Shown: one piece after another, positions 3,476-63,089 of the stretch
Layout of the letters: each line of letters begins with the position of its first letter
How positions within the stretch are numbered: the first letter of the stretch is position 1
Notes under the pieces: generated by a model
What the model was told of the DNA's origin: nothing
The model's database searches: none
What the model saw: the letters and a program-made list of their open reading frames with translations, nothing else
Program-made: the position numbers and the translations under genes
Assembly (NCBI RefSeq): GCF_001194135.2
Contig: NC_068983.1
Span: 167,685,529 to 167,749,527 of the forward strand
DNA: 63,999 nt
From: Octopus bimaculoides
Taxonomy: Eukaryota
Direction of reading: 5' to 3'

Positions 3476-4392
3476 ACCAGTGTTTTGAGGTGTTTTGTGA
3501 TGTTATTGGAGAGAAGTGTGTTCGTATATGGATGATGGTTCACTTGCAGTTAGTGACTCTGCTAAGAAAGAAGCTTGGAAGTGTCACAACGAAGGGCTAC
3601 TAAATGTAGAGAACTCATGGGAGAAGGGGAGTGTGCCTGATGTAGATTCAAGAGAGGGACAGTAGCATGGTAGATAAAGCCATGAAGGATATGGAGCTGG
3701 GGAAAGCCCCTGGCCCATCAGGAATCACAGCTGAGGTGTTTAAAAAATCTGGTGGTGTGGAATATGGACTAGTCACCCATATAGTAAATCAGGTTGTACA
3801 CGAGGGAGTCATACCCAATGGCTGGTGTAGCAACACCATAGTCAACTGCTACAAAGGAAAAGGAGATGCTTTAGATAGAAATAATTACTGAGGTATCAAA
3901 GTTAGACCGGGCTAAGATACAGAGAGGGTCATAGCCCAACTAATTAAGACCAGAGTTAGTCTAGATGAGATACAATTTGGTATCGTGCCACTGATGCTAT
4001 ATTTCTGGTAAGGCAGCTGCGGGAGAGGTACCTTTGTACTTGGCTTTTGTTGATATGGAGAAAGCCTTTGACAAGTTCCTTCAATCCCTTATCTGGTGGT
4101 CACTGCAAAAACTATGGTTAGATGAGTTGTTGGTGAGAGTGGTACAAGCCATGTACAGGGATGGCATCAATAAGGTGAGGGTTGGCAACAAGCATAGCGA
4201 TGAATTCAAGGTACAAGTAGGGATTCATCAAGGATCAGTCCTCAGCTCTCTCCTGTTCATCATAGTCCTCCAGGCAATAACAGGAATTTAAGATAGGCCG
4301 CCCCTGGGAGTTCCTCTATTCTGATGACCTTGTTCTCGTAGCTGAATCATTTCCAGAACTAGAGAATTTTCGGGTGTGGAAGCAAGGCAGCA
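3476..4392 (+). mobile_element. RTE-clade LINE reverse-transcriptase fragment (decayed)
   Basis: GKAPGPSGITAE, LAFVDMEKAFD and GIHQGSVLS motifs followed by YSDDL, across frameshifted ORFs 3667-3891 and 4034-4291. Confidence 0.9.
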
Positions 4393-6149: not shown

Positions 6150-6600
6150 CTTTAATATCGTGGCACTCTGTCAGTTACGATGACGAGGGTTCCAGTTGAT
6201 CTGATCAAAGGAACAGCCTGCTCATGAAATTAACATGCAAGTGGCTGGGCACTCCACAGATATGTGTACCCTTAACATAGTTCTCGGGGAGATTCAGCGT
6301 GACAAGGCTGGCTCCTTTGAAATACAGGTTACAACAGGAAGAAAGAGTAAGAGAAAGTTGTGGTGAAAGAGTACAGCAGGGGTCACCACCATCCCCTGCC
6401 AGAGCCTCGTGGAGCTTTAGGTGTTTTGCTCAATAAACNNNNNNNNNNCAGCAGGGGTCACCACCATCCCCTGCCAGAGCCTCGTGGAGCTTTAGGTGTT
6501 TTGCTCAATAAACACTCACAATGCCCAGTCTGGGAATTGAAACCGCGATCCTATGACTGCGATTCCGCTTCCCTAACCACTGGGTCATTGTGCCTCCACA
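6150..6600 (-). mobile_element. SINE copy interrupted by an assembly gap
   Basis: GTTGATCTGATCAA..GAACAGCCTGCTC core (also at about 29975-30140) and a tRNA-like head at about 6530-6590. A 10-N gap lies at 6439-6448. Confidence 0.6.
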
Positions 6601-10949: not shown

Positions 10950-11440
10950 TTTCTAGTTTTACAGTTAATGCCTTTGGTTAATGCTTTTGGTTGTAAATCC
11001 TTCTTTAATTTGGGATGTTTGAGTTCCTGAATGTTGAGTTGAAGAGCACGTTGAAAGCCTATGTCAATTAGTGAAAGTGGGTAGTTCCTGATGATGAGTG
11101 TATCTTTTAGTTCATGTAGCTGTGTGTCTCATCCTTTTTGCTAGGTTGAAGGGGATGTTCATTCTGGGGTGGTATGAGTTGAATGGTAGATATTGCTTGG
11201 AGTCCGTAGGCTTATAGTATATATCTATTTCTATTATGTTGTTAGATTTCTTAATGAGGATGTTGAGGAAAGGAAGTTCTTGCTGGCTATATTCCATCGT
11301 GAATTGAATGTTTACATCAAGTCCATTTATAAGTGCTTGGAATTCTTTAAGTTTCTCTATATTTCTTCTTCTTTGTCTCCTTCCTCTCCGCCATCTCCAT
11401 CCTAACTTTTGCTGTTTAGAATAACAACTATGCAAATTTT
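10950..11440 (-). mobile_element. Penelope-like element RT C-terminal fragment
   Basis: NIQFTMEYSQQELPFLNILI...DIYYKPTDSKQYLPFNSYHP matches the PLE pattern IKFTxE..LPFLD..VYRKPT..YL...SxHP. Confidence 0.8.
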
Positions 11441-16945: not shown

Positions 16946-18957
16946 CAAGAGTTGTAAAAAATTAATTGATGAAAAATTAATTGCAATATATTGGTCCAAT
17001 TAATTGATTGGAGTCATACTGCCAATTAAAAAATTGATTGCTATCATATCAATTAATTGCAACATTGTCAGTGAAAGTTCTTCAAATGGCTCATACTTCA
17101 TTTGACATTCAAAGGGCAAATACAGCATTCTATTTTTCTTTGAGGTATTGTGCTGTTGCTTTGTTCTGACTGCTGAGAATGATTCACACATTCTGTCATG
17201 TTTAGGAATTGACTATTGTGTATGCTGTTAAGTGTTGATGCTTGATTTGGACTGCTGAGAATGATACACATTCTATCATGCTTGGGAATTGGCTATTGTG
17301 TATGTTGTCAAATAAATGCTGTTGAGTGATTCTTGGCTCTGACTGCCAAGAATGATTCACACATTCAGTCTTCAAGTCATTAAATCGTAACTTTGCCTGC
17401 AACATGGTTGCATCTTGAATTCCACTCCAACATATTACCTGAATCAAACTTTCATCAGTGGAGTGGTGAAATATCTTCCATTGTAAACTGTGGTGAAATA
17501 TCTTTTGTTTTAAACTAAGCCATGCCACATGAAAATGAGCAAATCATCAGAAAATATTTTGATTAAACAGACAGTAAACATGTATGGAAATGCAAGTGTG
17601 GAAAAAAGGAACTAGATGGACAAATATTATGAATCGTATAAAAAAACCAGCATCCAGAGTATTCTACTACACTAGCAACTTGACAACCATCTTCATCAAG
17701 TTTTCTTTTACCTAGAAGTAGTTTGGTCAGTTGCTTAGCCTATAGTGAATTTGTGTAGAATACCATTGATTGGATGTGCCTCTCATAAATTCAATCAAGC
17801 TGTTTCTGCTTATCTTGACAAGCAGGAAGTTCTGCTTGATAAAATTAACGTGTTGATGAGCAAGCTAAAATCACTAAAACTTGCAGGTAAACTTCAAGAA
17901 AAAATGCGTTTGCAAAGAAATAAACCCCATTGGTCCAGTACTTATGACATGATTGAGAGGAACATCCAACTCAAGCCCTTTTTAGACTCTTTTCAAGTTG
18001 ATCCAAAGCTGGTTGATTATCTGTTGACTCCACGTGACCAGAATGATCTGCAGACTCTAAAAGACAATTTTGGAAAGTTACACTCAGTAACAGTCACCTG
18101 GCAAAGAACAGAAATAGATTCAGGAGATGTTCAAATTCTTTTCGACGAAATTCTTGCATTGTATCCTTATGAGGAGTTTAAAAAATATTTGCTCCCAGCG
18201 GCAGCCATTGTGCACAGCCCAAATTTTGAAAGTGGAGTTGTGAAAATTTTACAACATGCAAAAGCAGAGTTAACTGCAGATGAAATGGCTGCTCTACATC
18301 AGCTGAAAGTGGTGGCAGACACGTCACGATTTACCTGGAGAAGATGATGATTTTGGAGTGTTAGCTTTAATTTGTTTGTAAAAACACAAAAAAGATTAAA
18401 TTTCACCTCAGCAATATCTGAACTGTAGATTTTTGTTTCCAGCGTCTAACATCTTGGAACGTTTCTTCAGCTCAGCAGGTTACGCTTTTAATGTTTTTCG
18501 GCAATACCAATGAATTTAGAAATGCAATTATTTCTAAAAGTCAATCGCATTTTCTGAGATGAAGAATTACTTTCAGAAATCTACGATTGTTCATGACCTT
18601 TTGCTATATTAGAACATTTTAATTTTCCAACTCGTCTGAGAAACTCTTTCAATTAAAGATCTTTAATTAATTTTTTTTTCAACTCCTGTACAATGTAGAG
18701 TAGACATGTAGTTTGTTCCCTATTCTAAATCAATAAAATTGAACTTTGAACATTTTTGAGACTATAAGAAGTGCCTTTTATTTTCCTACCATTTTGGCTC
18801 TTATCTAAATCAAAGCCAACACTCCAAAATATATAGTGATTTTATGTTTGGCAAAATAATTGACAATAATTGATTGGCCTGTATTCTAATTAAAATTAAT
18901 TGATTGCTAGGAAAATAATCGATTGGAAAAGTTCCAATCAATTATTTACAACCCCTG
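16946..18957 (+). mobile_element. hAT DNA transposon, internally deleted, both ends and TSD intact
   Basis: Imperfect TIRs: left CAAGAGTTGTAAA, right reverse complement CAGGGGTTGTAAA. Perfect 8-bp TSD GTTGCATG at 16938-16945 and 18958-18965. Internal remnants: BED finger (VWKCKCGK..WTNIMN), GCASHKFNQAV (CxxH) in ORF 17745-18347, and a dimerization-like LFPASNILERFFSSAG. Confidence 0.92.
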
Positions 18958-22178: not shown

Positions 22179-22521
22179 ATGGCTGTAGAGAAAAGGGCTA
22201 AATATTGTTTTGGAGTTGTCGATAGTACCAAAGAAAGTCATGATGTTTGTGTGGAAGGCGATCAGAGAACGGAGACAGCAACGACCGATGACAATAACAA
22301 TCGCAGCATGTACAAACACGGCAGGCATTTTACGAAGAATGCCAGCCGATTACCTCATCTGCTCATGTCTTGTATTCTGATTTTTTCCATCCTATGTACA
22401 CTGTCCACACAAGTCCATGCCATCAGTTCCCGTCATCGCCAACACCGAAAACATCGGCACCAAACTTATTCGCCAAAGTACAAAGATCGACGCCCCGCTA
22501 CGCCTGTGGCTGGGGTTGATG
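22179..22521 (+). CDS. Mosaic tyrosinase-like gene, coding exon 1 (signal peptide and basic tract)
   Basis: ORF with the hydrophobic core LLMSCILIFSILCTLSTQVHA and a probable cleavage after VHA, then SSRHRQHRKHRHQ. Donor G|GTAAGA at 22522, phase 1. The true start may be ATG 22179, 22308 or 22365. Confidence 0.8.
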
Positions 22522-27419: not shown

Positions 27420-28390
27420 CACCATTTTATGCCTGTTGTCCCTGCTGGTATGGGCTGGACGGCTTGACTAGGCTGGAGGGCTGCACCAAACTCCAGTCTG
27501 ATTTGACATGGTTTTCTACAGTTGGATGCCCTTCCTAACGCCAACCACTCTGAGAGTGAAATGGGTACTATTATGTGTCACTGGCATGGGTGCCATTTGC
27601 ATGACACTGGGGCGCGTTTACGTGTCACTGGCACTGGTGCAGTTTCCGTGACATGGGTATCTGCCACGATTGTGATTTTGCTTGGCTTGATGGGTCTTCT
27701 CAAGCACAACATAAAGCCAAAGGTCTTGGTCATTGCCTCCGTGGGACCCAACACTTGAACTCATCCACTTTGCCTCTGTGAGGCCCAATGTTCAAAAGAT
27801 GTTCTTTACATGCCACCAGCATGAGTGCATTTGGCTTGAAAGTGTCCTCACAAGCACAGCACATTGCCAAAGGTCTCTGTCACCAGTCATTGACTATGAG
27901 GCTCTAAGTTCATAGATCATGCTTCATCACTTCGTCCCATGTCTTCCTAGGTCTACCTCTACCACAGGTTCCCTCCACAGTTAGAAATTGGCACTTCTTT
28001 ATGCAGCTGTCCTCAACCATATGCATCACATGACCATACCAAAGCAGTCTCTCTTGTACACCACATCTGATTCCTCTGGCTAACTTTGCTCTCAAGATGC
28101 TTACACTCTGTCGAACTCACACACTGACATTGCACATCCAGCAAAGCATATTGGCTTCATTTCTTTCAAGCTTACGCATGTCATTGGCTGTTATAGCCCA
28201 TGTTTCACTGCCATACAGCATAGCTGTTTGCACACAGGCATCGTCCAATCTGCCTTTCACTCTGAGAGTGAGGCCTGTTGTTGCCAGCAGGAGCTCTCTG
28301 AACTTTGCCCTGCCTAATCTTATTCTCACAGCTACACTCTTGGAGCATCCACCTCCACTACTAACTTGGTGGCCTAGATAATGGAAGCTA
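27420..28390 (-). mobile_element. RTE LINE 3' fragment with tail
   Basis: Minus strand: KFRELL..LRVKGRLYDACVQTAMLYGSETW...LWYGHVMHM...GRGRPRKTWDEV, followed by the shared 3' UTR. Confidence 0.88.
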
Positions 28391-28716
28391 TTTACTATCT
28401 CTAGCTTGCTAGAGTGTGGAATGTGTGATATAAGGAAACTTTGTCAGTGAAAGAAAATCATTTTCTCGATTTCTTGTGATCAGTAAATATGTTTTGTATA
28501 TCAGGAATTGTCTAAGATGCTTGAGGTTTGTAATAAATTTCCAAAACTTATCATTCAAAATATATCCCCCCCCCCACCACAATTTAGCAATTTATCTAGA
28601 AACTATATTTGCATGACATTTGCTAGTTTTCAGTGATGCATTTGTCACTCATGGAACTTTAATTTTGACTCTGAAAAGCGATTAATTTTCATTATCATTT
28701 TATTGTTTTCTTTCAG

Positions 28717-29261
28717 GAATTGATATTATTAAAGAAATTGGGAGGCAGTCTACTAACCAGACTGTGAAAAGAGTGTCTTTGAGGGCCGTGCAGTTATCTG
28801 AAGGTTTCCATGGTAGAATAAGTCGAAAATCAATGAAAAGTCTTCTGAGGAAATCTAGCAGAACATTTTCTTTATTGTTATATGGTGATATTTCAGCAAG
28901 CGATGGCACTCAAGCCACTTTGATAAGTGTACATTCTGAAGGAAGAGAATTACCATTGTTACAGGTCTTGTTAGACACTTCAAACCAGTCTTTAGTTGTT
29001 CGGTACCAAGGTGAAAGATCTTACCAACGTGTTAATATTCATGGATTCATTCCTATTACATCTGAAGACATTTCTGAAATACAATCACATCCAAAAAGTC
29101 CCTGGGACCAGTTGCTGTTTACTTTCGGTCTTAATGAATTGCGCATTGTGGTTGACTGTTTTCCAGAGAAAATTATTCCTCTTCGTCAGAAAATGGCTAT
29201 TTTTGATGGCCATAAATTATTTTTCTTTGGCCATGATAAAAAGAAGAAGAATTATTTAGAG
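28717..29261 (+). CDS. Exon 2: TSPN / laminin-G-like domain
   Basis: Acceptor TTTCAG|. Open frame GIDIIKEIG...WDQLLFTFGLNELRIVVDC...NYLE, matching the TSPN pattern WxxLxxxxxxxxxxxxVDC. Donor GAG|GTTTGT. Phase 1 to 0. Confidence 0.88.
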
Positions 29262-32478: not shown

Positions 32479-32545
32479 GGTTTGGTTTATAAGGCAAAAC
32501 TTTACAATCATATTATTAAAGGATTTCCTTGGACTTGTCCCAAAG
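32479..32545 (+). CDS. Exon 3: end of the TSPN domain
   Basis: TTCCTCAG|GLVYKAKLYNHIIKGFPWTCPK G|GTAAG. Phase 0 to 1. Completes the domain with its terminal Cys. Confidence 0.85.
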
Positions 32546-40464: not shown

Positions 40465-40583
40465 CCAATTCTCTTCAAGCCGATGACAGTGGTTTCAGTT
40501 CTCTCACTTTGACTGAACGTGTGACAACTCTACAGAGACAAGTGGAACAGCTGGTTGTTGTGGTTAATTCTATTCAGCTCCAG
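40465..40583 (+). CDS. Exon 4: coiled coil
   Basis: CTTTAG|(A)NSLQADDSGFSSLTLTERVTTLQRQVEQLVVVVNSIQLQ CAG|GTAAAT. Phase 1 to 0. Heptad pattern. Confidence 0.85.
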
Positions 40584-44344: not shown

Positions 44345-44476
44345 AACACTAAAATGGCACAGCGTATTGCACAACTGGAAACCTGTGAATGCCTCCCCAA
44401 ATGTACATACAATGGCAAAACGTTTGGTGAGAAAGAAACATGGCAACCAGACACCTGTACTCTATGCCACTGTCAG
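44345..44476 (+). CDS. Exon 5: end of coiled coil, CxC and start of VWC
   Basis: CTTTAG|NTKMAQRIAQLETCECLPKCTYNGKTFGEKETWQPDTCTLCHCQ|GTATGT. Phase 0 to 0. Confidence 0.9.
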
Positions 44477-44722: not shown

Positions 44723-44771
44723 GAAGGAAAACCTGATTGCAAAGTGAGGGCTGATATTCCTGGTTGTTCAG
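44723..44771 (+). CDS. Exon 6: end of the truncated VWC
   Basis: TTATTAG|EGKPDCKVRADIPGCS G|GTATGG. Phase 0 to 1. Confidence 0.85.
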
Positions 44772-46702: not shown

Positions 46703-46924
46703 AGCCATGTAGCAGTTCACCTTGTAAACATGGTGGATCGTGTGTTGGAAGCAAATCAAATGGTACATTCAAATGTCTCTGTCCAACACCCTTCAGCGGT
46801 ACTCTCTGTGAGACCTGGGTCAATCCTTATGTCTGGCCTGCTGACTCTGGTTACTGCCATGAAACCTATGAAGCATATTACTTTGATCGTAATAAAAATC
46901 AATGCCTTACATTTAATTATACAG
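46703..46924 (+). CDS. Exon 7: EGF-like domain and first half of a Kunitz domain
   Basis: TTTGTAG|(E)PCSSSPCKHGGSCVGSKSNGTFKCLCPTPFSGTLCE (6-Cys EGF), then TWVNPYVWPADSGYCHETYEAYYFDRNKNQCLTFNYT G|GTATGG. Phase 1 to 1. Confidence 0.92.
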
Positions 46925-47545: not shown

Positions 47546-50500
47546 TTTGTTGCTACTTTTCTTTGTAGATGTGTTATTCATGCAAGATACAGAAGAAACT
47601 GATTCTCCCCCAAACACAACAAGTTCCCTGCATCATTTCTTTTATTATTTCACAATACTTGATGGGAACTTCTACACTCTTCTAAAACATTTCATTATCT
47701 ACAAACTTCATTCATTTACAAAATCTATCTTTAAGATTTAATTATTGCTCTTAATCAAATCTAAAATATGCCTTTGTGATAAATTAAGATTGTAAGGACA
47801 TATTTCACTAATTCTTCTCAAATCTGAATATAGCAATTGTATTTTTATGTAATATCCTCATTGTCCACTTTCCATACTGCCATGGGTTGGATAGTTTGTC
47901 CTGGTCCAAATAAGATCTTATTAGCATTTCCTACCCTTTTGGATAGGTTGGGGACTGTATTTCACCCGTGCATTGCATTTTTGGTATTGTTTCTGATTGT
48001 ATGCCCTGCTTAATGCCACCCACTTAACAGACTATAGGGAGTGCATTTTATGATAAAGCCCCAGCTCTAGTAAGGTTGCTTTGTCCCCTGCAGGATGAAA
48101 GGGTTTTCACTACTCAGTGTTGTTTTCATTTGTTTCCGACATAGGGAGGGAGAGGGGTGAAGGTGATAGAAGTAAAAGTAATGAAAGTGAGGAGGTGAAG
48201 GGAGAAATGATGACACATATCAGCAAAGATCACACACACACACACCCACACACGAGTAGTACAGGATGACAGCACAAGTAGAATTCAAAATATGAATATA
48301 TTATTTTTAATCAGCAGAAGTTACAAAGTGACTCAAAAGCTGAGCATTTTATGCATGGCCACTTATCAAATTTTGAATTTTATCCACACACACACACAGA
48401 TATTTAGATGCATTCATTTTTGAGATATTTCTGAAACAGGAAGTGAGTCATGTTTTGAGAATATTTGCTACAGCACCTCAAAATATTAGATTTTATGCTC
48501 TTCTGAAAGTCTCATATGTAGTAATATAATATGACAATACCACTATTTGTATAAGTATGTGGTGTCTGTTTTTGTTCATCATTTAGTCTTAGACTTGGCA
48601 TTAACAGATGGCTCTGCTGGTGTTAAGAGGAACAGAAAGCTTGCAGGTTCTACTATAAACATAAGGTGTTTTTTCGCTTTCCTGATGGTTGTGTAGCAAG
48701 TATTACAGATGTGGAAAGTACCTATCAGTTAGTGACAGGGGGTGACTTGCTCCCTGGTGTGTGGGCAGTGTTCTTTAACTGCATTGGGTTTTCTTTTAGT
48801 TGTGTGATGGAGATGCAATGAAGAATGTCTAGAAAGATGGTTTTGGTCACCCACTGAGCTCTTTCAGATGAGTTGGAGCCAAATCATATTTTACATGAAG
48901 AGTCGTCAAATACTTGAGGGGTTTCACTGAAGCATTAAGATGATGTGTGGTGTGATGATAGTTTACAATTGTTGACTAAAGGCTATGTTTGAAGATGAGG
49001 AAGAGGTCAACAGAACTTATGGAATCAATGTGTTGGTCATGGATAAATGTAGGCTGTCCTTTTTCATTCATTCTANNNNNNNNNNCTAGCAGTCTCTTGA
49101 TTCTTCTATTTTCACTTCCACTCACCACCTACATTGACGGCCCATAAAGATACTTCACCCCTGCTATTTTTATCTCTTCCCCACTCCACCCTGCTCCCTT
49201 CATCCCTTCTCTATAATAACTATTACTTAAACATTTTCTCGCACTGTCTCTAATGATGGGATATATAAAATACCCTGGAAACAACTGTAAGACCTTCTCT
49301 TGATAAATGTTCTGAAAACTATTCACAGCCTTGGATTTTTTACCCCATTCTGTTAATTTTTATATATATGCTTGCTAATACACAACCCACGTTGGACTCC
49401 TCATTCATATCATTATTACCTGATACCTTTGGGTCTTTTTGTCACCAGTACCTCTCATACCCCCTACACACACACACACATCATGATGATGATATGTCTA
49501 GGTGTGTTGTTTGTGTTGTACCCTGTCATGTGATGATTGTAAATGTGCATTGTCATTATATAAGCGAGGTTGTTTTTTGTGAAAAAAGCATGTCTGATCA
49601 TGGGAAATATTACCTTGCTTATAAACAGGTGAGGCCTGGCAACAGGAAAGGCATTGGCTTGTAGAAAATCTGCCTCAATGAATTCTATTTGACCCATGCA
49701 AGCATGGAAAAGTGAACATTAAAGCAATGATGCTGATGTATGTTATGAAAGTTAAGCGTGTGTGAATGGGATTCACCATTTAGGCAATTGACTTTGACAA
49801 GATGTATTTAGTTTTCAGCAGACAATGGTAAAAGAAATATTAAAAGCCATTTTAACATTGAATTAAATATTAAAACAACTTCCTTAAAAATACAGAAATA
49901 AAACTAAACCTACTGTCTGAACGTATTCCATTTGTTTGTAGCTGTATATGAGTAGATATTTTGTGAAAATGCTTGGAATAATTCTTTAATTGGTGTCATT
50001 TCTAAACACTTCAGAAATAGTTTTTCAGTTGGCATTCTATGACACTTAGGAACCAACCAGTTACACTGTATAATTTGACCTTTTTTTTTTTTGTCACAAT
50101 TTTATTCTTATTTTATTTATTTAGTTTTTGTCCTAATATTATGAGTTATAAAATGAAATACCCAAAGAGGCAGGTCGTTGTTTATTCTTGTTCTTTGAAT
50201 ATTTGGCTTAGTGTAGCACAAGAGGGAGAGTTCTTTGCAAGAAGAGGAAAACTGTAGGATTTATATTTACTTGTATATGTGTGTTTGTGTCTTTGAAGAG
50301 AGCCTGATAAAAATATAGATGAAAATAGTAGAATTACTTTGACATTTAAGATGATGTTGAAGCTTACAAGATTAATGTAACAGTTTGTGTGTATATGTGT
50401 TAGGGAGGAGGAGGGAGGTTTAAAGGGAAATATGTGTGCATTTACACTTTGTTGTAATAAAGAGCTATTTTACCAATAATATGTGAATATTAAGGTTTTA

Positions 50501-51296: not shown

Positions 51297-51439
51297 GTTG
51301 TGGTGGCAATGTGAACAATTTCAAATCATTGGAAGAATGTCAGAAGAATACCCTGTTTGGCGCTTGCTGTATTTACCAATATTCTATAAAAAGAGAAGAC
51401 ATAATAAATGGAAAGCAATCTGCTCAGAAAAGCTGTCAG
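51297..51439 (+). CDS. Exon 8: second half of Kunitz and start of a Cys-rich module
   Basis: TTCCAG|(G)CGGNVNNFKSLEECQKNTLFGACCIYQYSIKREDIINGKQSAQKSCQ|GTCTGT. Phase 1 to 0. Confidence 0.88.
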
Positions 51440-53234: not shown

Positions 53235-53485
53235 GTTCTGAGTGTGTCTGCTTGCAGAAAATTTCACAGACATTCAAATAATCCATATGAAGAACAAGAA
53301 GTTGTAGGATTCTATCCAGGATTAAGTTGTGAGGATGCTAGATACCCACTTAATAATTCAAATCCAGTCATTGTCAAAGAAAAATTTTGTCATCTACTTG
53401 GACATAGTGAAATTGGAGTTGGCAAAGAAATAACAATTGGTTGTAAAAACTGCATTTGTATGCCTGGTGGAAAATTGAAGTGCAA
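53235..53485 (+). CDS. Exon 9: Cys module and VWC/pacifastin-like module
   Basis: TTTACAG|VLSVSACRKFHR...VVGFYPGLSCEDARYP...FCHLLGHSEIGVGKEITIGCKNCICMPGGKLKC AA|GTAAGT. Phase 0 to 2. Confidence 0.88.
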
Positions 53486-55537: not shown

Positions 55538-55900
55538 ATGTTCTGACTTAATTCTTCGCAAAGAAATTCGAGATTTCACCTGGGAAGAAATGACCAAACT
55601 CCAGCAGGCTATTTCCCAGCTTCGTTTGTCAGGAATAGACAATATCTGGAATAAATACAGAGACCTCTACATGGTTCATCGCATGCATTCACATGGTGGG
55701 GCATTCTATCTTCCATGGCATCGGCAGTTTTTGCAGCTTGTTGAATTGCAACTGAAAGAGATAGACTGCCATGTTACCTTACCATATTTTGATTTCACAA
55801 CTGATGCTGCTAATTTCTCAGAAGCCATCATCTGGCAGCCCAATTTCTTTGGAGGAGATGGGTGGGGATGGTGTGTTCCAGATCATCCTTTTGGTGACAG
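55538..55900 (+). CDS. Exon 10: tyrosinase domain, CuA half
   Basis: TTCCTAG|(K)CSDLILRKEIRDFTWEE...YMVHRMHSHGGAFYLPWHRQFL...VTLPYFDFT...FFGGDG...HPFGD AG|GTGACT. Tyrosinase motifs RKEIR, LPWHR, LPYxDx and FGG. Phase 2 to 2. Confidence 0.93.
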
Positions 55901-56507
55901 GTGACTATTTAATGTTATTTTTTATGTTACTCTTAAAAATGAATTTTAATTAATTATATGAACAATTAATCAGAATTTTCCAGTCATCATCATTATTTTC
56001 TGTTTGTTTTCCCTGCTGGCATCACTTGAATGTGTCACCATAGTCTGTGTCTGTTCTTATTTGAAGATTTTGTCCTGCTAGATGGGGCAAAAGACCAAGC
56101 TTCTCATGTATCTTTTGTTTTCAGCTTGGTTTCTAGAATTGTATATCTTTCCTGAATGTATTGTGTGTTTGTGTGTGTACACAGGGTAATCTTCTTTTTA
56201 GCACTATTGCCACAAAACAGCATTCATTTCAATATACGCATCATTTTACTTCTCAAAAATCCTATCTTTATTATATTTGAATGGGAAATATTTACTTGAG
56301 ATTTTAAGATTAAGATGATAATGACAACTAATCTTAAAATTAAGCTTGAATGAACTTATTTTTTGCTTTGTTAGACTTAAGATTTTAAAAAGTGTGGTCA
56401 ACATAAAAAAGAATAATTTGAGATTTGATTAATTTGGGATTTGATTAAGGGCAATTAATACTTCTCAGGCTCCTTTATATTATTAATTATTCTTTTTTTT
56501 TTAATAG

Positions 56508-57052
56508 TAATGCTTGGAAACCATGTCTGAAAAGGAACTTCAGCCATATTGTTGAGGTACCAACAATGCTTGATGTTGCTGCTGCTATCAGTAAAAAAGA
56601 TTTCATGGAAATGAGTCAATTTCTGGAGACATTTGCTGCGTATATCCATTCATTTGTTGGTGGTGATATGTCAACGACAACAATGGCTTATGACCCTCTC
56701 TTCTACATCATCCAAACTTACATTGACAGATTGTATGCCACCTGGCAGAAAATTGGCCACAACAAATTTAAATTCCCAGCAGCCTATGGAAATATTCCAA
56801 TGGTTCCATTCAATACGGCACCGTTGGATGTTCTTGATCTAGAAAATGACCTTTGTGTGACTTACATTCCCCCAGGAAAGGGTCGACCATGTAACAAAAG
56901 TGCTCATTTGCATGTGTCAGAGTTAAGTGCTGTTGAGAAAAATCCTAATATTCATGTGAAAATCATAAGTAGATCTGGTTATGATCAGTTTGGCTACAAT
57001 TCCAGGGGCTTTGACCGTAGAGGCTTTAATAAATTTGGATATAACTATCATG
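56508..57052 (+). CDS. Exon 11: tyrosinase domain, degenerate CuB half, and start of pentapeptide repeats
   Basis: TTAATAG|(S)NAWKPCLKRNF...LETFAAYIHSFVGGDM...DPLFYIIQTYIDRLYATWQ...CVTY...GYDQFGYNSRGFDRRGFNKFGYNYH G|GTAAGT. Phase 2 to 1. Confidence 0.93.
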
Positions 57053-58689: not shown

Positions 58690-59800
58690 TTTTCTATATT
58701 GGTTTGTGCCTCAGAATCCCTCTAGCCCGACGTCTGAAGTCGCTAACCACTAACCTATGCTGAGTTGAGCATTCTTCACCTTGGAAAGACTTCATTCACG
58801 AGCATATGCCTGTCCCTGTTTCTGGTGAGGATGTTGTCAATGTGGCCTGTGTGCCCATCAGCTTGATAAGTGATCAGATGACTGGCAGGTGTCCTGAAAT
58901 TAATGTTGCAAACTGTTATGCCATTTGCATCACAGAACTCCAGCAGCCTTGTTCCATCCTCATTTCTGAAGCCAAAGCTGTAGCTTCCATGCTCACTGAA
59001 AACCATCAAAGATTTCCAACATAGCCATTGAAGTCCCCTGCCACAATGAGAACACCATTGTCTGTCACTGTGAAGGAAGCCTACAGAAGGGATTCATAGA
59101 AACAGCCCAGCATGTGGAGCACATGCAGAGATAAATGACACTTGTATTAAATGGGACTAATCTCAGCTTAATAATCTTATCACACACCCTGTCTACCTAA
59201 ATCATCTTATTCACTCATTCCTCTGTCAAAAGAATACCTTTTCCACTGAACCCAATCAAACTGTTGATTCACTTTCACTTCTCTGACACAGATAGAAAAC
59301 TGTGTGACTCGTGGGCCATGTTTCACTGCTGTGTAACATGGCTGTTTGCACACATGCGTCATACAGTCTACCTTTTACTCTGAGCGAGAGGCCCTTTGTC
59401 ACCAGCAGAGGTAGGAGCTCTCTGAACTTTGCCCAGTCTATTCTTATTCTAGCAGCTACGGTCTCACTACTGACTTGGTCACCTAGGTAACGGAAGCTAT
59501 CAACTACTTGTAGTTTTTCTCCTTGGCATGTGACGGAGGCTGTTTTCTGCACATTTTCAGTATTTATTGCCCCTATGCATTTGCCACACACAAAAACTAT
59601 CTTCCCAGTTTGCCTTCCTTTGATATTGCTGCACCTCTTATGTGTCCATAGCTTACACCAGGTACATCGTATGGAGCTTCTACCTACACCTTTTCTACAG
59701 ATCAAGCAGGGCCATCTACCTGAAGAGATTTGTGATTTGTCTGCCTTCCTACTTACTAAGACTTGGGTTTTTGCTAGATTCACTCTGAGGCCCTTCGATT
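58690..59800 (-). mobile_element. RTE LINE fragments (APE endonuclease piece and post-RT C-terminal piece)
   Basis: GSYSFGFRNEDGTRLLEFC...LITY...IDNIL (endonuclease); NLAKTQVLV...C.IC.KGVGRSSIRCTWC..W.HKRCS...FRYLGD...KFRELLPLL. Confidence 0.88.
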
Positions 59801-61032
59801 TTAGACCTTGCTCTTGCTCTCTCTCTCTCTATATATATATTATTTAGAGGTCACAATACATATATCAAAGCACTACTAATAACTTCTTATGTTGAGAAAA
59901 CTCAAACATTCTTCAGGCACAGACCACATCTCGTAACAAACTAAAGAATTTGAATAATAGAAGAAACGCAAAAAGTCTGAGAAGGCAGCAGACAGAAAAT
60001 GCAGACAATAAACAATAGAAAATGAAAAACAGAAACGAAAATGTAAAAAATCAAAATAGGGAACTATTTAATACATATATTGTGACCTTTAAATGAATAA
60101 TATTTATCTCTCATCAGATGGAGAACTTTTTTTGTTGAATTTTCTGTCACGGATCAGTACATTATATATATACATACATACATGAATAATGGATCATATA
60201 TAGAGACATGCATACATGTGGGGCTCACGGTTTGCTTATATACATTATATGTACTCATATATTATGCACTTGTAAAAACAGTTCATAGGTTGTAAAAAAA
60301 AAAAATCAAGGGCATTATGTTTATCTCTATGCATAGCCATCCATTTGCTTATGTGCTCCAGTGAGCATGCTCATACATGTGAGCAGGGTAACAAAGATGC
60401 ACGAACGTCAACGTGTGCAGGTGCTCAAACTCTTTCAAGGTGGCGGCGAGAGGTTGGTGGTGTTGAAATTGAGATTCAATGGAGATGGCATGAAATAGAT
60501 GGTCCTCCATGAAGATTTCTGGGAGCGAATTAAATTGGAAATTTCCAACTGAAATTTAAAGTACCTGCAGAAGTGGATATAGATTGGGTGGCGGGTGGGA
60601 GTGAAATTGAAAATTATGATAGGAATTGAAAGTGGTACCTGAGAGAGAGAATTCAAGACATAAATTAAAGTGATGCAGCCTGCAGGGACTGAAGGAAATT
60701 TGGCTAAATTATATTGTAACATGTATGTGAAGGAAAGCTGCAAAATGAGAGTGAAAATAAAAATAAACCAGTTTGCTTTGCTGTTTTAGTTTCAATGTGA
60801 TGTGTAAACCTCTAGAAGTGAAGCTGAAAATCATGTGCTAATTTTCTACATAATATCCTAGAATCAACGAGAATTGCACATGACTTTGGTAGTATGTTCA
60901 GAGAAACTATCATAGGCCTATGGCAGAAGACACTTGCTCAAAGTGTCAGACATTGGGATTGAACCCCAAAACCATGTAGCTGGGAAGCAAACATGTTAAC
61001 CACACACCATGCTTGTTCCTGCAGCCATCCTT

Positions 61033-62191: not shown

Positions 62192-62311
62192 GTGTTAACC
62201 GAGAGGGATTTGATCGAGAGGGTTATGACTTGGCAGGATATAACAGGTATGGATTTGATCATGATGGTTATGATCGGGATGGTTTCAATGTTTCTGGCAG
62301 AGATCGTGATG
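62192..62311 (+). CDS. Exon 12: G[YF][DN]xx repeats; the gene continues beyond the window
   Basis: TTCTGCAG|(G)VNREGFDREGYDLAGYNRYGFDHDGYDRDGFNVSGRDRD G|GCAAGT. The putative donor is GC; an alternative in-phase GT donor lies at 62381. Confidence 0.85.
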
Positions 62312-63089
62312 GCAAGTTGGACGCTTCTCTTATTTTTGAGAAACAATACTTACAACATAGACATTGTTTAAACAGGAAAGGTTAGTATTGACTATATATA
62401 AAAAATTATATGACAAATTTGGGTATTTGTTAGAGTTGCAATTTTAGTTTTGTAAAATTTTAATATTTCATTTACTTTCAGGATTTCTGACTTAAATTCA
62501 CAATAACTTTAGTTTAAAGTAAATTTAACTCTTTAAGCATTCCGATTGCTCTGTCAAATGTAATATTTATATTGTTTTGAATGCATCCTGCCTTATCTCA
62601 TAGCTTTGAGATTTCGATATGATTACAGTAACATTGGTAGGTGTGAGATGCTAGATCTAGCTGGTTTGAACATAAAACTAATAGAATATTTGAGGCCGGA
62701 TATGGCTGGATTAAATGATAAAAGGTTTAACATTAGTGGTTAAGGAAATATCTAATGGATTGCATACAAGAAGAAATGGGGTTAGGAAAATATCTTATTA
62801 AGTGTGGGCATGGATCTGTCCTTAAGAAGTTCTCTTTGCAGCCAGGTGGCTTCATGTCCAGTCTCACTGCATGACACCTTGATCCAGTGTCTTCTACTAT
62901 GGCTTTGGACCAAACGGTACTTTGTGAGGGAATTTGGTGTATGGATTAAAACCAAGCCCATCATGTCAATCCCACTCGTTCGAATAGACTGGAGATCATT
63001 ACTTCATTTAGAAACAATGAACTGCCAAGACATGAACTGCTGAGCAAACTCATTAAGTGGGGAAATATCAATTCACTTACAAACACTCA

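What the first reader, a model, noticed from the sequence alone, without database searches (positions are those of the whole stretch)
56623..56727. Pseudo-tyrosinase: two of three CuB histidines are replaced while the scaffold is conserved
The canonical CuB pattern is LExxHNxxHxxVGGxM...DPxFxxHHxxxD. Here it is LETFAAYIHSFVGGDMSTTTMAYDPLFYIIQTYID. The first ligand is Ala (GCT 56635), the second His is kept (56647), and the HH pair is Ile-Gln (56710, 56713). All six His are required for the dinuclear O2-binding centre of tyrosinases, catechol oxidases and hemocyanins; even the Zn-binding TYRP1 and DCT retain them. The flanking fold residues (VGGxM, DPxF, DxxxxxW, CxxY) and the reading frame are intact, so the protein appears maintained but should lack oxidase activity. 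Possible roles include catechol/quinone or DOPA-protein binding, regulation of active phenoloxidases, or structure.
Basis: partly seen in the sequence, partly recalled or inferred. Interest (0 to 1): 0.8.

Follow-up and report, generated by a model that had tools for sequence, protein, structure and literature searches.

The report
Copper-site-deficient tyrosinase domain in octopod kielin/chordin-like gene
The stretch encodes part of a tyrosinase-like domain that has lost three of its six copper-binding histidines yet is strongly conserved, and it is one module of a giant kielin/chordin-like secreted protein found across animals, not a stand-alone enzyme gene.

Summary
Window 56623-56727 (+) translates to LETFAAYIHSFVGGDMSTTTMAYDPLFYIIQTYID. 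Ala (GCT 56635) sits at CuB ligand 1, His (56647) at ligand 2, and Ile-Gln (56710/56713) at the HH pair. A third canonical ligand is also gone: CuA ligand 1 is Tyr (55668).

The stretch lies in exon 56508-57052 of a multi-exon gene spanning at least 28.7-62.4 kb that runs off the window's 3' end. The gene is 80% identical and collinear to the 3774-aa "kielin/chordin-like protein" of the octopod Argonauta hians, which has Kunitz, EGF, two tyrosinase-like domains, 20 VWC repeats and a VWD domain.

All 11 exons have AG/GT borders and give an open 874-codon reading frame. For the tyrosinase-like domain, dN/dS against Argonauta is 0.078, and the Ala and Gln codons differ only synonymously. It is therefore neither an error nor a pseudogene.

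The Tyr and non-His replacements at CuA-1 and CuB-1 are shared by all 25 domains of this type, from molluscs, a brachiopod, a hemichordate, a crinoid and amphioxus. Related choanoflagellate-type proteins keep all six His. The Gln is seen in the two octopods and a crinoid.

Most likely this is an ancient non-oxidase binding or scaffold module. A remodelled metal site is not excluded.

The parts
56623..56727 (+). CuB region of tyrosinase-like domain 1 (Tyr1). A164 (GCT 56635) replaces CuB ligand 1, H168 (CAT 56647) is CuB ligand 2, I189-Q190 (56710, 56713) replace the HH pair, and Q190 sits at CuB ligand 3.
56508..57052 (+). Exon encoding the C-terminal half of Tyr1 plus the first G[YF][DN]xx pentapeptide repeats (from about 56968). 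Acceptor AG at 56506-7, donor GT at 57053-4.
55538..55900 (+). Exon encoding the N-terminal half of Tyr1 (CuA region): Y44 (TAC 55668) at CuA ligand 1, H47 (55677), H50 (55686), H52 (55692, CuA ligand 2), H61 (55719, CuA ligand 3).
62192..62380 (+). Exon of G[YF][DN]xx pentapeptide repeats following Tyr1. It is in phase with the previous exon (g + gt = Gly). The gene continues beyond the window.
53235..53485 (+). Cys-rich (VWC-like) exon directly upstream of Tyr1.
51297..51439 (+). Exon with the C-terminal half of the Kunitz domain.
46703..46924 (+). Exon with the EGF domain and the N-terminal half of the Kunitz domain (Pfam EGF 2e-05, Kunitz 4.8e-14 on the spliced protein).
44723..44771 (+). 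Small exon (EGKPDCKVRADIPGCS) completing the first VWC-like module.
44345..44476 (+). VWC-like exon (Pfam VWC 19.2 bits, below the 27.6 cut-off).
40465..40583 (+). Linker exon (…LTERVTTLQRQVEQLVVVVNSIQLQ), conserved with Argonauta and Batillaria.
32479..32545 (+). Short exon at the end of the N-terminal domain.
28717..29261 (+). Exon of the N-terminal ~200-residue domain, 80% identical to Argonauta. A LamG/TSPN-like nature is only hinted at by a sub-threshold Laminin_G_3 hit in the crinoid homolog.
22179..22238 (+). Tentative first coding exon (MAVEKRAKY…, resembling the annotated Argonauta N-terminus). The donor site is not resolved and there is no signal peptide, so the true 5' end is uncertain.

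Best explanation
The stretch encodes the CuB half of Tyr1, the first of two tyrosinase-like domains in the octopod ortholog of a giant secreted kielin/chordin-like protein. In the Argonauta ortholog the domain order is: N-terminal domain, VWC-like, EGF, Kunitz, Cys-rich, Tyr1, G[YF][DN]xx pentapeptide repeats, EGF, Kunitz, repeats, Tyr2, repeats, about 20 VWC, VWD.

Shown here:
- The domain keeps the tyrosinase fold and scaffold residues.
- It has Tyr, Ala and Gln at three of the six canonical copper-ligand positions.
- It is encoded by intact, correctly phased exons.
- It is under strong purifying selection.
- The replacements at CuA ligand 1 and CuB ligand 1 are shared by every domain of this type across Bilateria, whereas the sister clade, which includes choanoflagellate proteins, keeps six His.

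Inferred:
- A canonical binuclear copper centre cannot form, so the domain is not a tyrosinase, catechol oxidase or O2 carrier.
- It has been kept since before the protostome-deuterostome split as a non-catalytic binding or scaffolding module of an extracellular, probably BMP-modulating, matrix protein.
- The most plausible ligand for the former substrate pocket is a phenolic side chain, for example the Tyr-rich pentapeptide repeats that flank every such domain.
- Its conserved histidines (H47, H50, H61, H168) may hold a single structural metal.
For: Sequence and fold:
- Pfam Tyrosinase E = 1.3e-22.
- The closest solved structures by sequence are mollusc hemocyanin units and bacterial tyrosinases.
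- The AF2 model has pLDDT 68.5 and pTM 0.71, with the ligand-bearing helices at pLDDT 70-90. Its best Foldseek matches are B. megaterium and Streptomyces tyrosinases, TM 0.62-0.66.

Ligand mapping:
- Y44, H52, H61, A164, H168 and Q190 align with H38, H54, H63, H190, H194 and H216 of Streptomyces MelC2.

Gene integrity and selection:
- 11 exons all have AG/GT borders and give an 874-codon open frame, 80% identical and collinear to Argonauta hians GAB1599713.1.
- dN/dS for Tyr1 is 0.078 (pN 0.077, pS 0.564). Tyr1 is the best-conserved of the regions compared, at 86% amino-acid identity.
- The Ala and Gln codons differ synonymously between the two octopods.

Family-wide pattern in the 25 Tyr1-type domains:
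- CuA ligand 1 is Tyr in 25/25.
- CuB ligand 1 is never His.
- CuB ligand 2 is His in 23/25.
- CuB ligand 3 is His in 19, Gln in 3 and Tyr in 3.
- By contrast, 46-50 of the 50 ordinary tyrosinases have His at each of the six positions. In the 7-member sister clade, which includes three Salpingoeca proteins, His occupies each position in 5-7 of 7.

Phylogeny and architecture:
- NJ bootstrap support is 82 for Tyr1, 84 for Tyr2, 97 for Tyr1+Tyr2, and 84 with the choanoflagellate-type clade added.
- VWC x20-32 + VWD + Tyrosinase is confirmed by Pfam in Argonauta, Lingula, shark, crinoid, Limulus and amphioxus.
- Amphioxus Tyr1 has lost nearly all these histidines yet keeps the domain. This favours a metal-independent role.
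- Pentapeptide repeats flank every Tyr domain examined.
Against: - No biochemical data exist; loss of activity is inferred from ligand loss only.
- The Tyr1 clade has conserved histidines of its own (H47 25/25, H50 20/25, H61 24/25, H168 23/25), which looks like selection on a metal site.
- dS is about 1, close to saturation, so the dN/dS value is approximate.
- No RNA evidence for this species was available.
- The BMP-modulator role is carried over from the name and architecture of KCP/Kielin, not tested.
- The proposed binding of Tyr-rich repeats is speculation from co-occurrence.
Confidence: 0.75

Rival explanations
1. The domain is a remodelled metalloprotein, not a metal-free pseudoenzyme. 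The family-specific histidines H47 and H50, together with H52, H61 and H168, would bind one copper (or another metal) at or near the old CuA site. This would give a mononuclear redox or structural centre with a chemistry different from tyrosinase.
For: H47 is His in 25/25 and H50 in 20/25 Tyr1-type domains, against 8/50 for H47 in ordinary tyrosinases, where His is not among the seven commonest residues listed at the H50 position. H61 and H168 are almost invariant. H47 lies three residues after the lost CuA ligand 1 at the end of the same predicted helix. H50 occupies the position of the thioether Cys two residues before CuA ligand 2 in mollusc hemocyanin (alignment, …TCCLHG…).
Against: Amphioxus Tyr1 lacks H50, H52, H61, H168 and H190 yet retains the domain, and the crinoid lacks H168 and H190. 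A metal site is therefore not universally required. CuB keeps at most one or two ligands.
Confidence: 0.2
2. The substitutions are sequencing or assembly errors, or the locus is a decaying pseudogene copy of a tyrosinase.
For: CAA (Gln) is one third-position change away from CAY (His). Two 10-N assembly gaps exist elsewhere in the window. No reads or cDNA could be examined.
Against: An independent genome (Argonauta hians) has the same Tyr, Ala and Gln, with synonymous codon differences. There are 11 exons with canonical splice sites and no stop in 874 codons. dN/dS is 0.078. The same replacements occur at CuA ligand 1 and CuB ligand 1 in 25 domains from several phyla.
Confidence: 0.02
3. It is a stand-alone secreted pseudo-tyrosinase gene, as the reader implicitly assumed, acting for example as a regulator of active phenoloxidases.
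For: Prokaryote-style gene calls in public assemblies list the domain as isolated 240-360 aa 'proteins'.
Against: Those calls are single exons read through into introns. In the window the two Tyr1 exons are in phase with upstream Kunitz, EGF and VWC-like exons and with downstream repeat exons, collinear with a 3774-aa annotated protein. The same collinear layout is seen in locus L001.
Confidence: 0.03

Closest known systems
Kielin/chordin-like protein (KCP, Kielin): extracellular BMP modulators built of many VWC (chordin-type cysteine-rich) repeats plus a C-terminal VWD domain
   Same: The window gene is the collinear, 80%-identical counterpart of the Argonauta hians protein that NCBI names kielin/chordin-like. 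Homologs from Lingula, shark, crinoid, Limulus and amphioxus carry 22-32 VWC repeats plus VWD.
   Different: As I recall them, the characterised mouse and human KCP and Xenopus Kielin consist of VWC repeats plus VWD (Kielin also has a TSP-N domain), with no tyrosinase, Kunitz or pentapeptide-repeat modules. I could not verify this with these tools. Here about 1900 residues of Kunitz, repeat and tyrosinase-like cassettes precede the VWC array. The VWC/VWD part lies outside the window.
Type-3 copper proteins of the tyrosinase / mollusc-hemocyanin type (Pfam PF00264)
   Same: Same fold, same helices carrying the ligand positions, and the same scaffold residues: PWHR, VGG, DPxF, Phe at -4 and Asp at +4 of CuB ligand 3.
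   Different: Three of six ligands are replaced (Tyr, Ala, Gln). The Asn after CuB ligand 1 is Ala. The domain is embedded in a multidomain matrix protein.
Copper-free derivatives of arthropod hemocyanin (insect hexamerins, crustacean cryptocyanin/pseudo-hemocyanin)
   Same: Same principle: a type-3 copper fold that lost its histidines and was retained for a non-oxygen, non-oxidase role (established knowledge).
   Different: These belong to a different branch of the superfamily. The window domain's closest solved relatives are mollusc hemocyanin units and bacterial tyrosinases, and no arthropod hemocyanin or phenoloxidase appears in the structure searches. Hexamerins are free storage proteins, not domains of a signalling or matrix protein.
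TYRP1 / DCT (tyrosinase-related proteins with Zn)
   Same: Tyrosinase paralogs with altered metal chemistry.
   Different: They retain all six histidines (Aguilera et al. 2013, PMC3658974). This domain does not.
Choanoflagellate-type giant proteins with a Kunitz, pentapeptide-repeat and tyrosinase cassette (e.g. Salpingoeca urceolata P0039, S. rosetta P0031)
   Same: They form the sister clade of the Tyr1 and Tyr2 domains (bootstrap 84). They have the same Kunitz-then-tyrosinase order and the same flanking G[YF][DN]xx repeats.
   Different: Most keep all six histidines and lack the VWC/VWD array.

Membership tests
Type-3 copper protein (tyrosinase / catechol oxidase / mollusc hemocyanin) | Sequence match to the tyrosinase central domain (PF00264) above the curated threshold | tested here: met
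   81.7 bits against a 22.6 cut-off, E = 1.3e-22; 77.4 bits on the spliced protein
Type-3 copper protein (tyrosinase / catechol oxidase / mollusc hemocyanin) | Four-helix-bundle tyrosinase fold | tested here: met
   AF2 model pTM 0.71; Foldseek probability 1.00 and TM 0.62-0.66 to B. megaterium and Streptomyces tyrosinases. Model confidence is moderate.
Type-3 copper protein (tyrosinase / catechol oxidase / mollusc hemocyanin) | CuA motif H1-(n)-H2-(8)-H3 with three His | tested here: not met
   H1 is Tyr44 (TAC 55668). H2 = H52 and H3 = H61 are present.
Type-3 copper protein (tyrosinase / catechol oxidase / mollusc hemocyanin) | CuB motif H1-(3)-H2-(n)-H3 with three His | tested here: not met
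   H1 is Ala164, H2 is His168, H3 is Gln190.
Type-3 copper protein (tyrosinase / catechol oxidase / mollusc hemocyanin) | Binds two Cu and O2, or oxidises phenols | not testable with these tools
   Needs recombinant protein, metal analysis and activity assays.
Kielin/chordin-like protein (KCP/Kielin) | Orthology to proteins annotated as kielin/chordin-like | tested here: met
   Collinear exons and 80% identity over 874 residues to A. hians GAB1599713.1.
Kielin/chordin-like protein (KCP/Kielin) | Long array of VWC (chordin-type CR) repeats | tested here: inconclusive
   Only one sub-threshold VWC (19.2 bits) lies in the window. The ortholog has 20 downstream of the part covered. That part of the gene is beyond the window's 3' end.
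Kielin/chordin-like protein (KCP/Kielin) | C-terminal VWD domain | tested here: inconclusive
   Present in the Argonauta ortholog and in five homologs from other phyla, but outside the window.
Kielin/chordin-like protein (KCP/Kielin) | Binds BMPs and modulates BMP signalling | not testable with these tools
   Functional assay needed.
Pseudoenzyme domain (fold of an enzyme retained without its catalytic machinery) | Catalytic or ligand residues replaced while the fold residues are kept | tested here: met
Pseudoenzyme domain (fold of an enzyme retained without its catalytic machinery) | Maintained by purifying selection | tested here: met
   dN/dS 0.078 against Argonauta. The replacements are fixed across phyla.
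Pseudoenzyme domain (fold of an enzyme retained without its catalytic machinery) | Demonstrated lack of the ancestral activity | not testable with these tools
   Requires enzymology.
Arthropod hexamerin / cryptocyanin (copper-free hemocyanin derivatives) | Homology to arthropod-type hemocyanin or phenoloxidase | tested here: not met
   The solved relatives found are mollusc hemocyanin units, tyrosinases, polyphenol oxidase and an o-aminophenol oxidase; no arthropod hemocyanin or phenoloxidase is named. This is an analogy only.

The most novel reading that the evidence does not exclude
Bilaterian kielin/chordin-like proteins carry an ancient cassette of Kunitz, Tyr-rich G[YF][DN]xx pentapeptide repeats and tyrosinase. 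It would have been inherited from a unicellular ancestor in which the tyrosinase was active, as choanoflagellate-type homologs mostly keep six His. In animals the enzyme would have been converted, before the protostome-deuterostome split, into a pair of pseudo-tyrosinase 'reader' domains. These would dock tyrosine or DOPA side chains of the flanking repeats or of matrix partners. That would add a previously unrecognised recognition or cross-link module to a BMP-modulating matrix protein.
Probability: 0.2. Interest if true: 0.75.

Novelty: new variant of a known kind. Interest (0 to 1): 0.6.

Why it matters
Copper-free descendants of type-3 copper proteins are textbook cases for arthropod hemocyanin (hexamerins). 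I found no description of an equivalent on the tyrosinase / mollusc-hemocyanin branch, nor of one fixed as a domain inside a signalling or matrix protein.

The data here show two paralogous tyrosinase-like domains with eroded copper sites conserved in kielin/chordin-like proteins of molluscs, a brachiopod and a hemichordate. Homologs from echinoderms, amphioxus, chelicerates, crustaceans and fishes carry one such domain each. Copper-competent relatives occur in choanoflagellates.

If followed up, this would give a dated, testable example of enzyme-to-binding-module conversion. It would also point to an unstudied part of KCP-type BMP regulators. As far as I recall, the mammalian proteins studied so far lack these modules.

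For genome annotation, a PF00264 hit in such proteins should not be read as phenoloxidase capacity.

Tried and rejected
1. An exact look-up of the window's CuB-exon ORF in public assemblies found nothing on record. The species could not be named. An octopod origin is inferred from the Argonauta ortholog (80% amino-acid identity, dS about 0.9).
2. The word-indexed homolog search returned only exon-sized fragments without names. The exhaustive representative search was what revealed the giant proteins.
3. A sequence search of the N-terminal domain against solved structures gave no significant hit, and Pfam found nothing there. I therefore do not call it a TSP-N/LamG domain.
4. A search with the shark Tyr2-type domain, meant to learn whether tetrapod KCPs keep the module, returned fish and bacterial hits only. 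It cannot settle the question.
5. Five literature searches found no analysis of the copper ligands in these domains. The only mention is a passing remark that tyrosinase hits longer than 3000 aa have kielin/chordin-like domains (PMC11667028).
6. Pocket geometry could not be analysed because model coordinates are not returned.
7. A Pfam scan of intronic ORFs gave only sub-threshold reverse-transcriptase and PHD hits. One call failed on a frame error.
8. The error/pseudogene reading and the stand-alone-gene reading were considered and rejected (see the rival explanations).

Full report
**1. The observation**

Window 56623-56727 (+) translates to LETFAAYIHSFVGGDMSTTTMAYDPLFYIIQTYID.

The window is eukaryotic, with GC about 0.37, microsatellites and introns. 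The stretch lies in an exon running 56508-57052, with acceptor AG at 56506-7 and donor GT at 57053-4. The partner exon 55538-55900 encodes the CuA half. The two join in phase (ag + t = Ser).

The joined 302-residue domain hits Pfam Tyrosinase at E = 1.3e-22. In the PDB it matches mollusc hemocyanin functional units and bacterial tyrosinases. In those alignments Ala lies under CuB ligand 1, His under ligand 2 and Ile-Gln under the HH pair.

**2. Mapping of all six ligand positions**

Window residues are numbered from the Cys of CSDLILRKE. They fall on MelC2 residues as follows:

| Window residue | MelC2 residue | Ligand position |
|---|---|---|
| Y44 | H38 | CuA ligand 1 |
| H52 | H54 | CuA ligand 2 |
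| H61 | H63 | CuA ligand 3 |
| A164 | H190 | CuB ligand 1 |
| H168 | H194 | CuB ligand 2 |
| Q190 | H216 | CuB ligand 3 |

As I recall, these six are the crystallographic ligands of the Streptomyces enzyme. The PDB titles 'H63F-mutated' and 'N191G-mutated' agree with that numbering.

The Asn that follows CuB ligand 1 in some tyrosinases is also Ala. The scaffold residues are kept: PWHR, VGGDM, DPLF, Phe at -4 and Asp at +4 of CuB ligand 3. Aguilera et al. 2013 list the last two as universally conserved.

**3. What gene this is**

The exhaustive representative search found, as best hit, a 3774-aa protein that NCBI names 'kielin/chordin-like protein [Argonauta hians]'. Pfam finds in it 20 VWC repeats, two Tyrosinase domains and a VWD domain.

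tblastn of that protein against the window gives collinear matches from 28.7 kb to 62.4 kb on the + strand. I refined these into 11 exons. All have AG/GT borders. Spliced together they give an open 874-codon frame that is 80% identical to Argonauta residues 23-888.

Pfam on the spliced product finds Tyrosinase, Kunitz and EGF above threshold and one VWC below it.

The gene runs off the 3' end of the window. The second tyrosinase-like domain, the VWC array and the VWD domain are therefore not in the window. A tentative first exon starts at 22179, but the 5' end is unresolved.

The window is probably from an incirrate octopod. This is inferred only from the ortholog.

**4. Is it maintained?**

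I took the Argonauta genomic locus (L002) and paired codons through the protein alignment. Nei-Gojobori estimates are given below.

| Region | Codons | pN | pS | dN/dS | Amino-acid identity |
|---|---|---|---|---|---|
| Tyr1 | 250 | 0.077 | 0.564 | 0.078 | 86% |
| All shared codons | 790 | 0.110 | 0.532 | 0.129 | 80% |

- Tyr1 has the highest amino-acid identity of the regions compared.
- dS is about 1, so the ratio is approximate, but the raw proportions already show the contrast.
- The Ala and Gln codons are GCT/CAA in the window and GCG/CAG in Argonauta. The residues are conserved across synonymous change.
- The intron splitting Tyr1 is shared by the two octopods.
- Together these points exclude sequencing error and pseudogene decay as serious explanations.

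**5. How old are the losses?**

The tyrosinase-like domains of these giant proteins fall into two clades, Tyr1-type and Tyr2-type. NJ bootstrap support is 82 and 84 for each, 97 for the two together, and 84 when a third clade of giant proteins, which includes Salpingoeca proteins, is added.

Named members:
- Tyr1-type: Argonauta, Patella, Batillaria, Lingula, Ptychodera, Anneissia, Branchiostoma.
- Tyr2-type: Argonauta, Lingula, Ptychodera, Limulus, crustaceans, a shark and teleosts.

Pfam confirms VWC x22-32 + VWD + Tyrosinase in the shark, crinoid, Limulus and amphioxus proteins.

Residues in the 25 Tyr1-type domains:

| Position | Residues |
|---|---|
| CuA ligand 1 | Tyr 25/25 |
| CuA ligand 2 | His 8/25 |
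| CuA ligand 3 | His 24/25 |
| CuB ligand 1 | Val, Ala, Ile, Ser or Leu; never His |
| CuB ligand 2 | His 23/25 |
| CuB ligand 3 | His 19, Gln 3 (window, Argonauta, crinoid), Tyr 3 |

- Tyr2-type domains are more eroded.
- Of the 50 ordinary tyrosinases in the alignment, 46-50 have His at each of the six positions. In the 7-member choanoflagellate-type clade, His occupies each position in 5-7 of 7.
- The replacements at CuA ligand 1 and CuB ligand 1 therefore predate the protostome-deuterostome split.
- Only the His-to-Gln change at CuB ligand 3 is of limited distribution. It is at least as old as the split between the window species and Argonauta.

**6. Fold**

The AF2 model built on the 21-sequence alignment has mean pLDDT 68.5 and pTM 0.71. 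The helices carrying positions 44, 61, 164/168 and 190 have pLDDT 70-90. Its best PDB matches are Bacillus (Priestia) megaterium and Streptomyces tyrosinases, with TM 0.62-0.66 and probability 1.00. Coordinates are not returned, so pocket geometry could not be examined.

**7. Mechanism**

Shown: a conserved tyrosinase fold without a canonical binuclear site, embedded in a KCP-like multidomain protein and under strong constraint.

Inferred: it is not an oxidase or O2 binder. This rests on established knowledge that all six His are needed in tyrosinases, catechol oxidases and hemocyanins. TYRP1 and DCT also keep them.

I commit to a non-catalytic binding or scaffolding role (confidence 0.75). 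Two further observations shape the details:

- **Family-specific histidines.** H47 is His in 25/25 and H50 in 20/25 Tyr1-type domains. H50 sits at the place of the thioether Cys of mollusc hemocyanin. A remodelled, probably mononuclear, metal site is therefore a live rival (0.2). However, amphioxus Tyr1 has lost nearly all these histidines and the crinoid has lost two, so metal binding cannot be the universal reason for retention.
- **Flanking repeats.** Every Tyr domain of this superclade, including the six-His choanoflagellate ones, is flanked by runs of G[YF][DN]xx pentapeptide repeats, and a Kunitz domain was found upstream in those I scanned. In the window the repeats lie at about 56968-57052 and 62192-62313. 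This suggests an ancestral enzyme-substrate cassette, with a tyrosinase acting on tyrosines in cis. In animals it may have become a binding pair. This is speculation and is offered as the novel case (0.2).

**8. Comparison with what is known**

- **KCP/Kielin.** The gene's relatives are annotated as kielin/chordin-like. As I recall them, the characterised vertebrate KCP and Kielin lack tyrosinase, Kunitz and repeat modules. One search, meant to test tetrapods, was uninformative.
- **Hexamerins and cryptocyanin.** The closest conceptual parallel is the copper-free arthropod hexamerins and cryptocyanins. These belong to a different branch of the superfamily, and no arthropod hemocyanin appears among the structure hits.
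- **Literature.** In the searchable literature I found only a passing remark that tyrosinase hits longer than 3000 aa carry kielin/chordin-like domains (PMC11667028). I found no analysis of their copper sites.
- **Classification.** I rate it a new variant of a known kind, namely a type-3-copper pseudoenzyme.

**9. Verdict**

- Interest is 0.6. It is not a unique oddity of this genome. It is a window onto an apparently undescribed, deeply conserved pseudo-tyrosinase module in KCP-type proteins.

Noticed in passing
window 56968-57052 and 62192-62313 (+); also P0021, P0023, P0022, P0025-27, P0030, P0039 and others: Runs of five-residue G[YF][DN]xx repeats (e.g. GYDQFGYNSRGFDRRGFNKFGYN) flank every tyrosinase-like domain of this superclade, from choanoflagellate-type proteins to shark. 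No Pfam family matched them.
   Followed up: partly
P0021 residues about 1362-1620 (Argonauta ortholog; outside the window): The second tyrosinase-like domain of the same protein is more degenerate. Only CuA ligand 3 is kept: CuA ligand 1 is Tyr, CuA ligand 2 Ser, CuB ligand 1 Leu, CuB ligand 2 Gln and CuB ligand 3 Val. Fish, shark, Limulus and crustacean homologs carry this Tyr2 type.
   Followed up: partly
P0039 (Salpingoeca urceolata), P0031 (S. rosetta), P0032, P0044, P0050: Giant proteins, three of them from Salpingoeca species, form the sister clade and mostly keep all six His. Pfam found a Kunitz domain followed by the tyrosinase domain in the two I scanned (P0039, P0032), so that pairing predates animals.
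   Followed up: partly
P0025 (Branchiostoma floridae C3YUQ0), Tyr1-type domain residues 1-250: Amphioxus has lost almost every histidine of the site (E, K, N, A, N, Y at the H50, H52, H61, A164, H168, Q190 positions) while keeping the domain. The gene model seems N-terminally truncated.
   Followed up: no
window 55901-56507 versus locus L001 10064-10975: Tyr1 is split by an intron in the window and in Argonauta, but is a single uninterrupted exon in the unnamed ortholog-bearing contig L001 and, apparently, in the other fragments returned.
   Followed up: partly
window 6439-6448 and 49076-49085: Two runs of 10 N (assembly gaps). The first is flanked by a duplicated sequence: the same peptide SRGHHHPLPEPRGALGVLLNK reads on both sides in one frame. 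The second lies in the intron between exons 46703-46924 and 51297-51439.
   Followed up: no
window 3646-4288 (+), 58779-59828 (-), 28120-28443 (-), 11115-11438 (-): Fragmentary retroelement-like ORFs in intergenic and intronic DNA. There is a sub-threshold RVT_1 hit at 3995-4288 and a PHD-finger-like ORF at 59259-59828. The others have no Pfam hit.
   Followed up: partly
window 17739-18344 (+): A 202-aa open frame with no convincing family match (only a chance-level Pfam hit). It is possibly a transposase remnant.
   Followed up: partly
window 22179-22238 (+) and P0021 N-terminus: The annotated Argonauta protein and the matching window exon start without a recognisable signal peptide, although the protein is built of extracellular domains. 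The true first exon is probably missing from the annotation.
   Followed up: no
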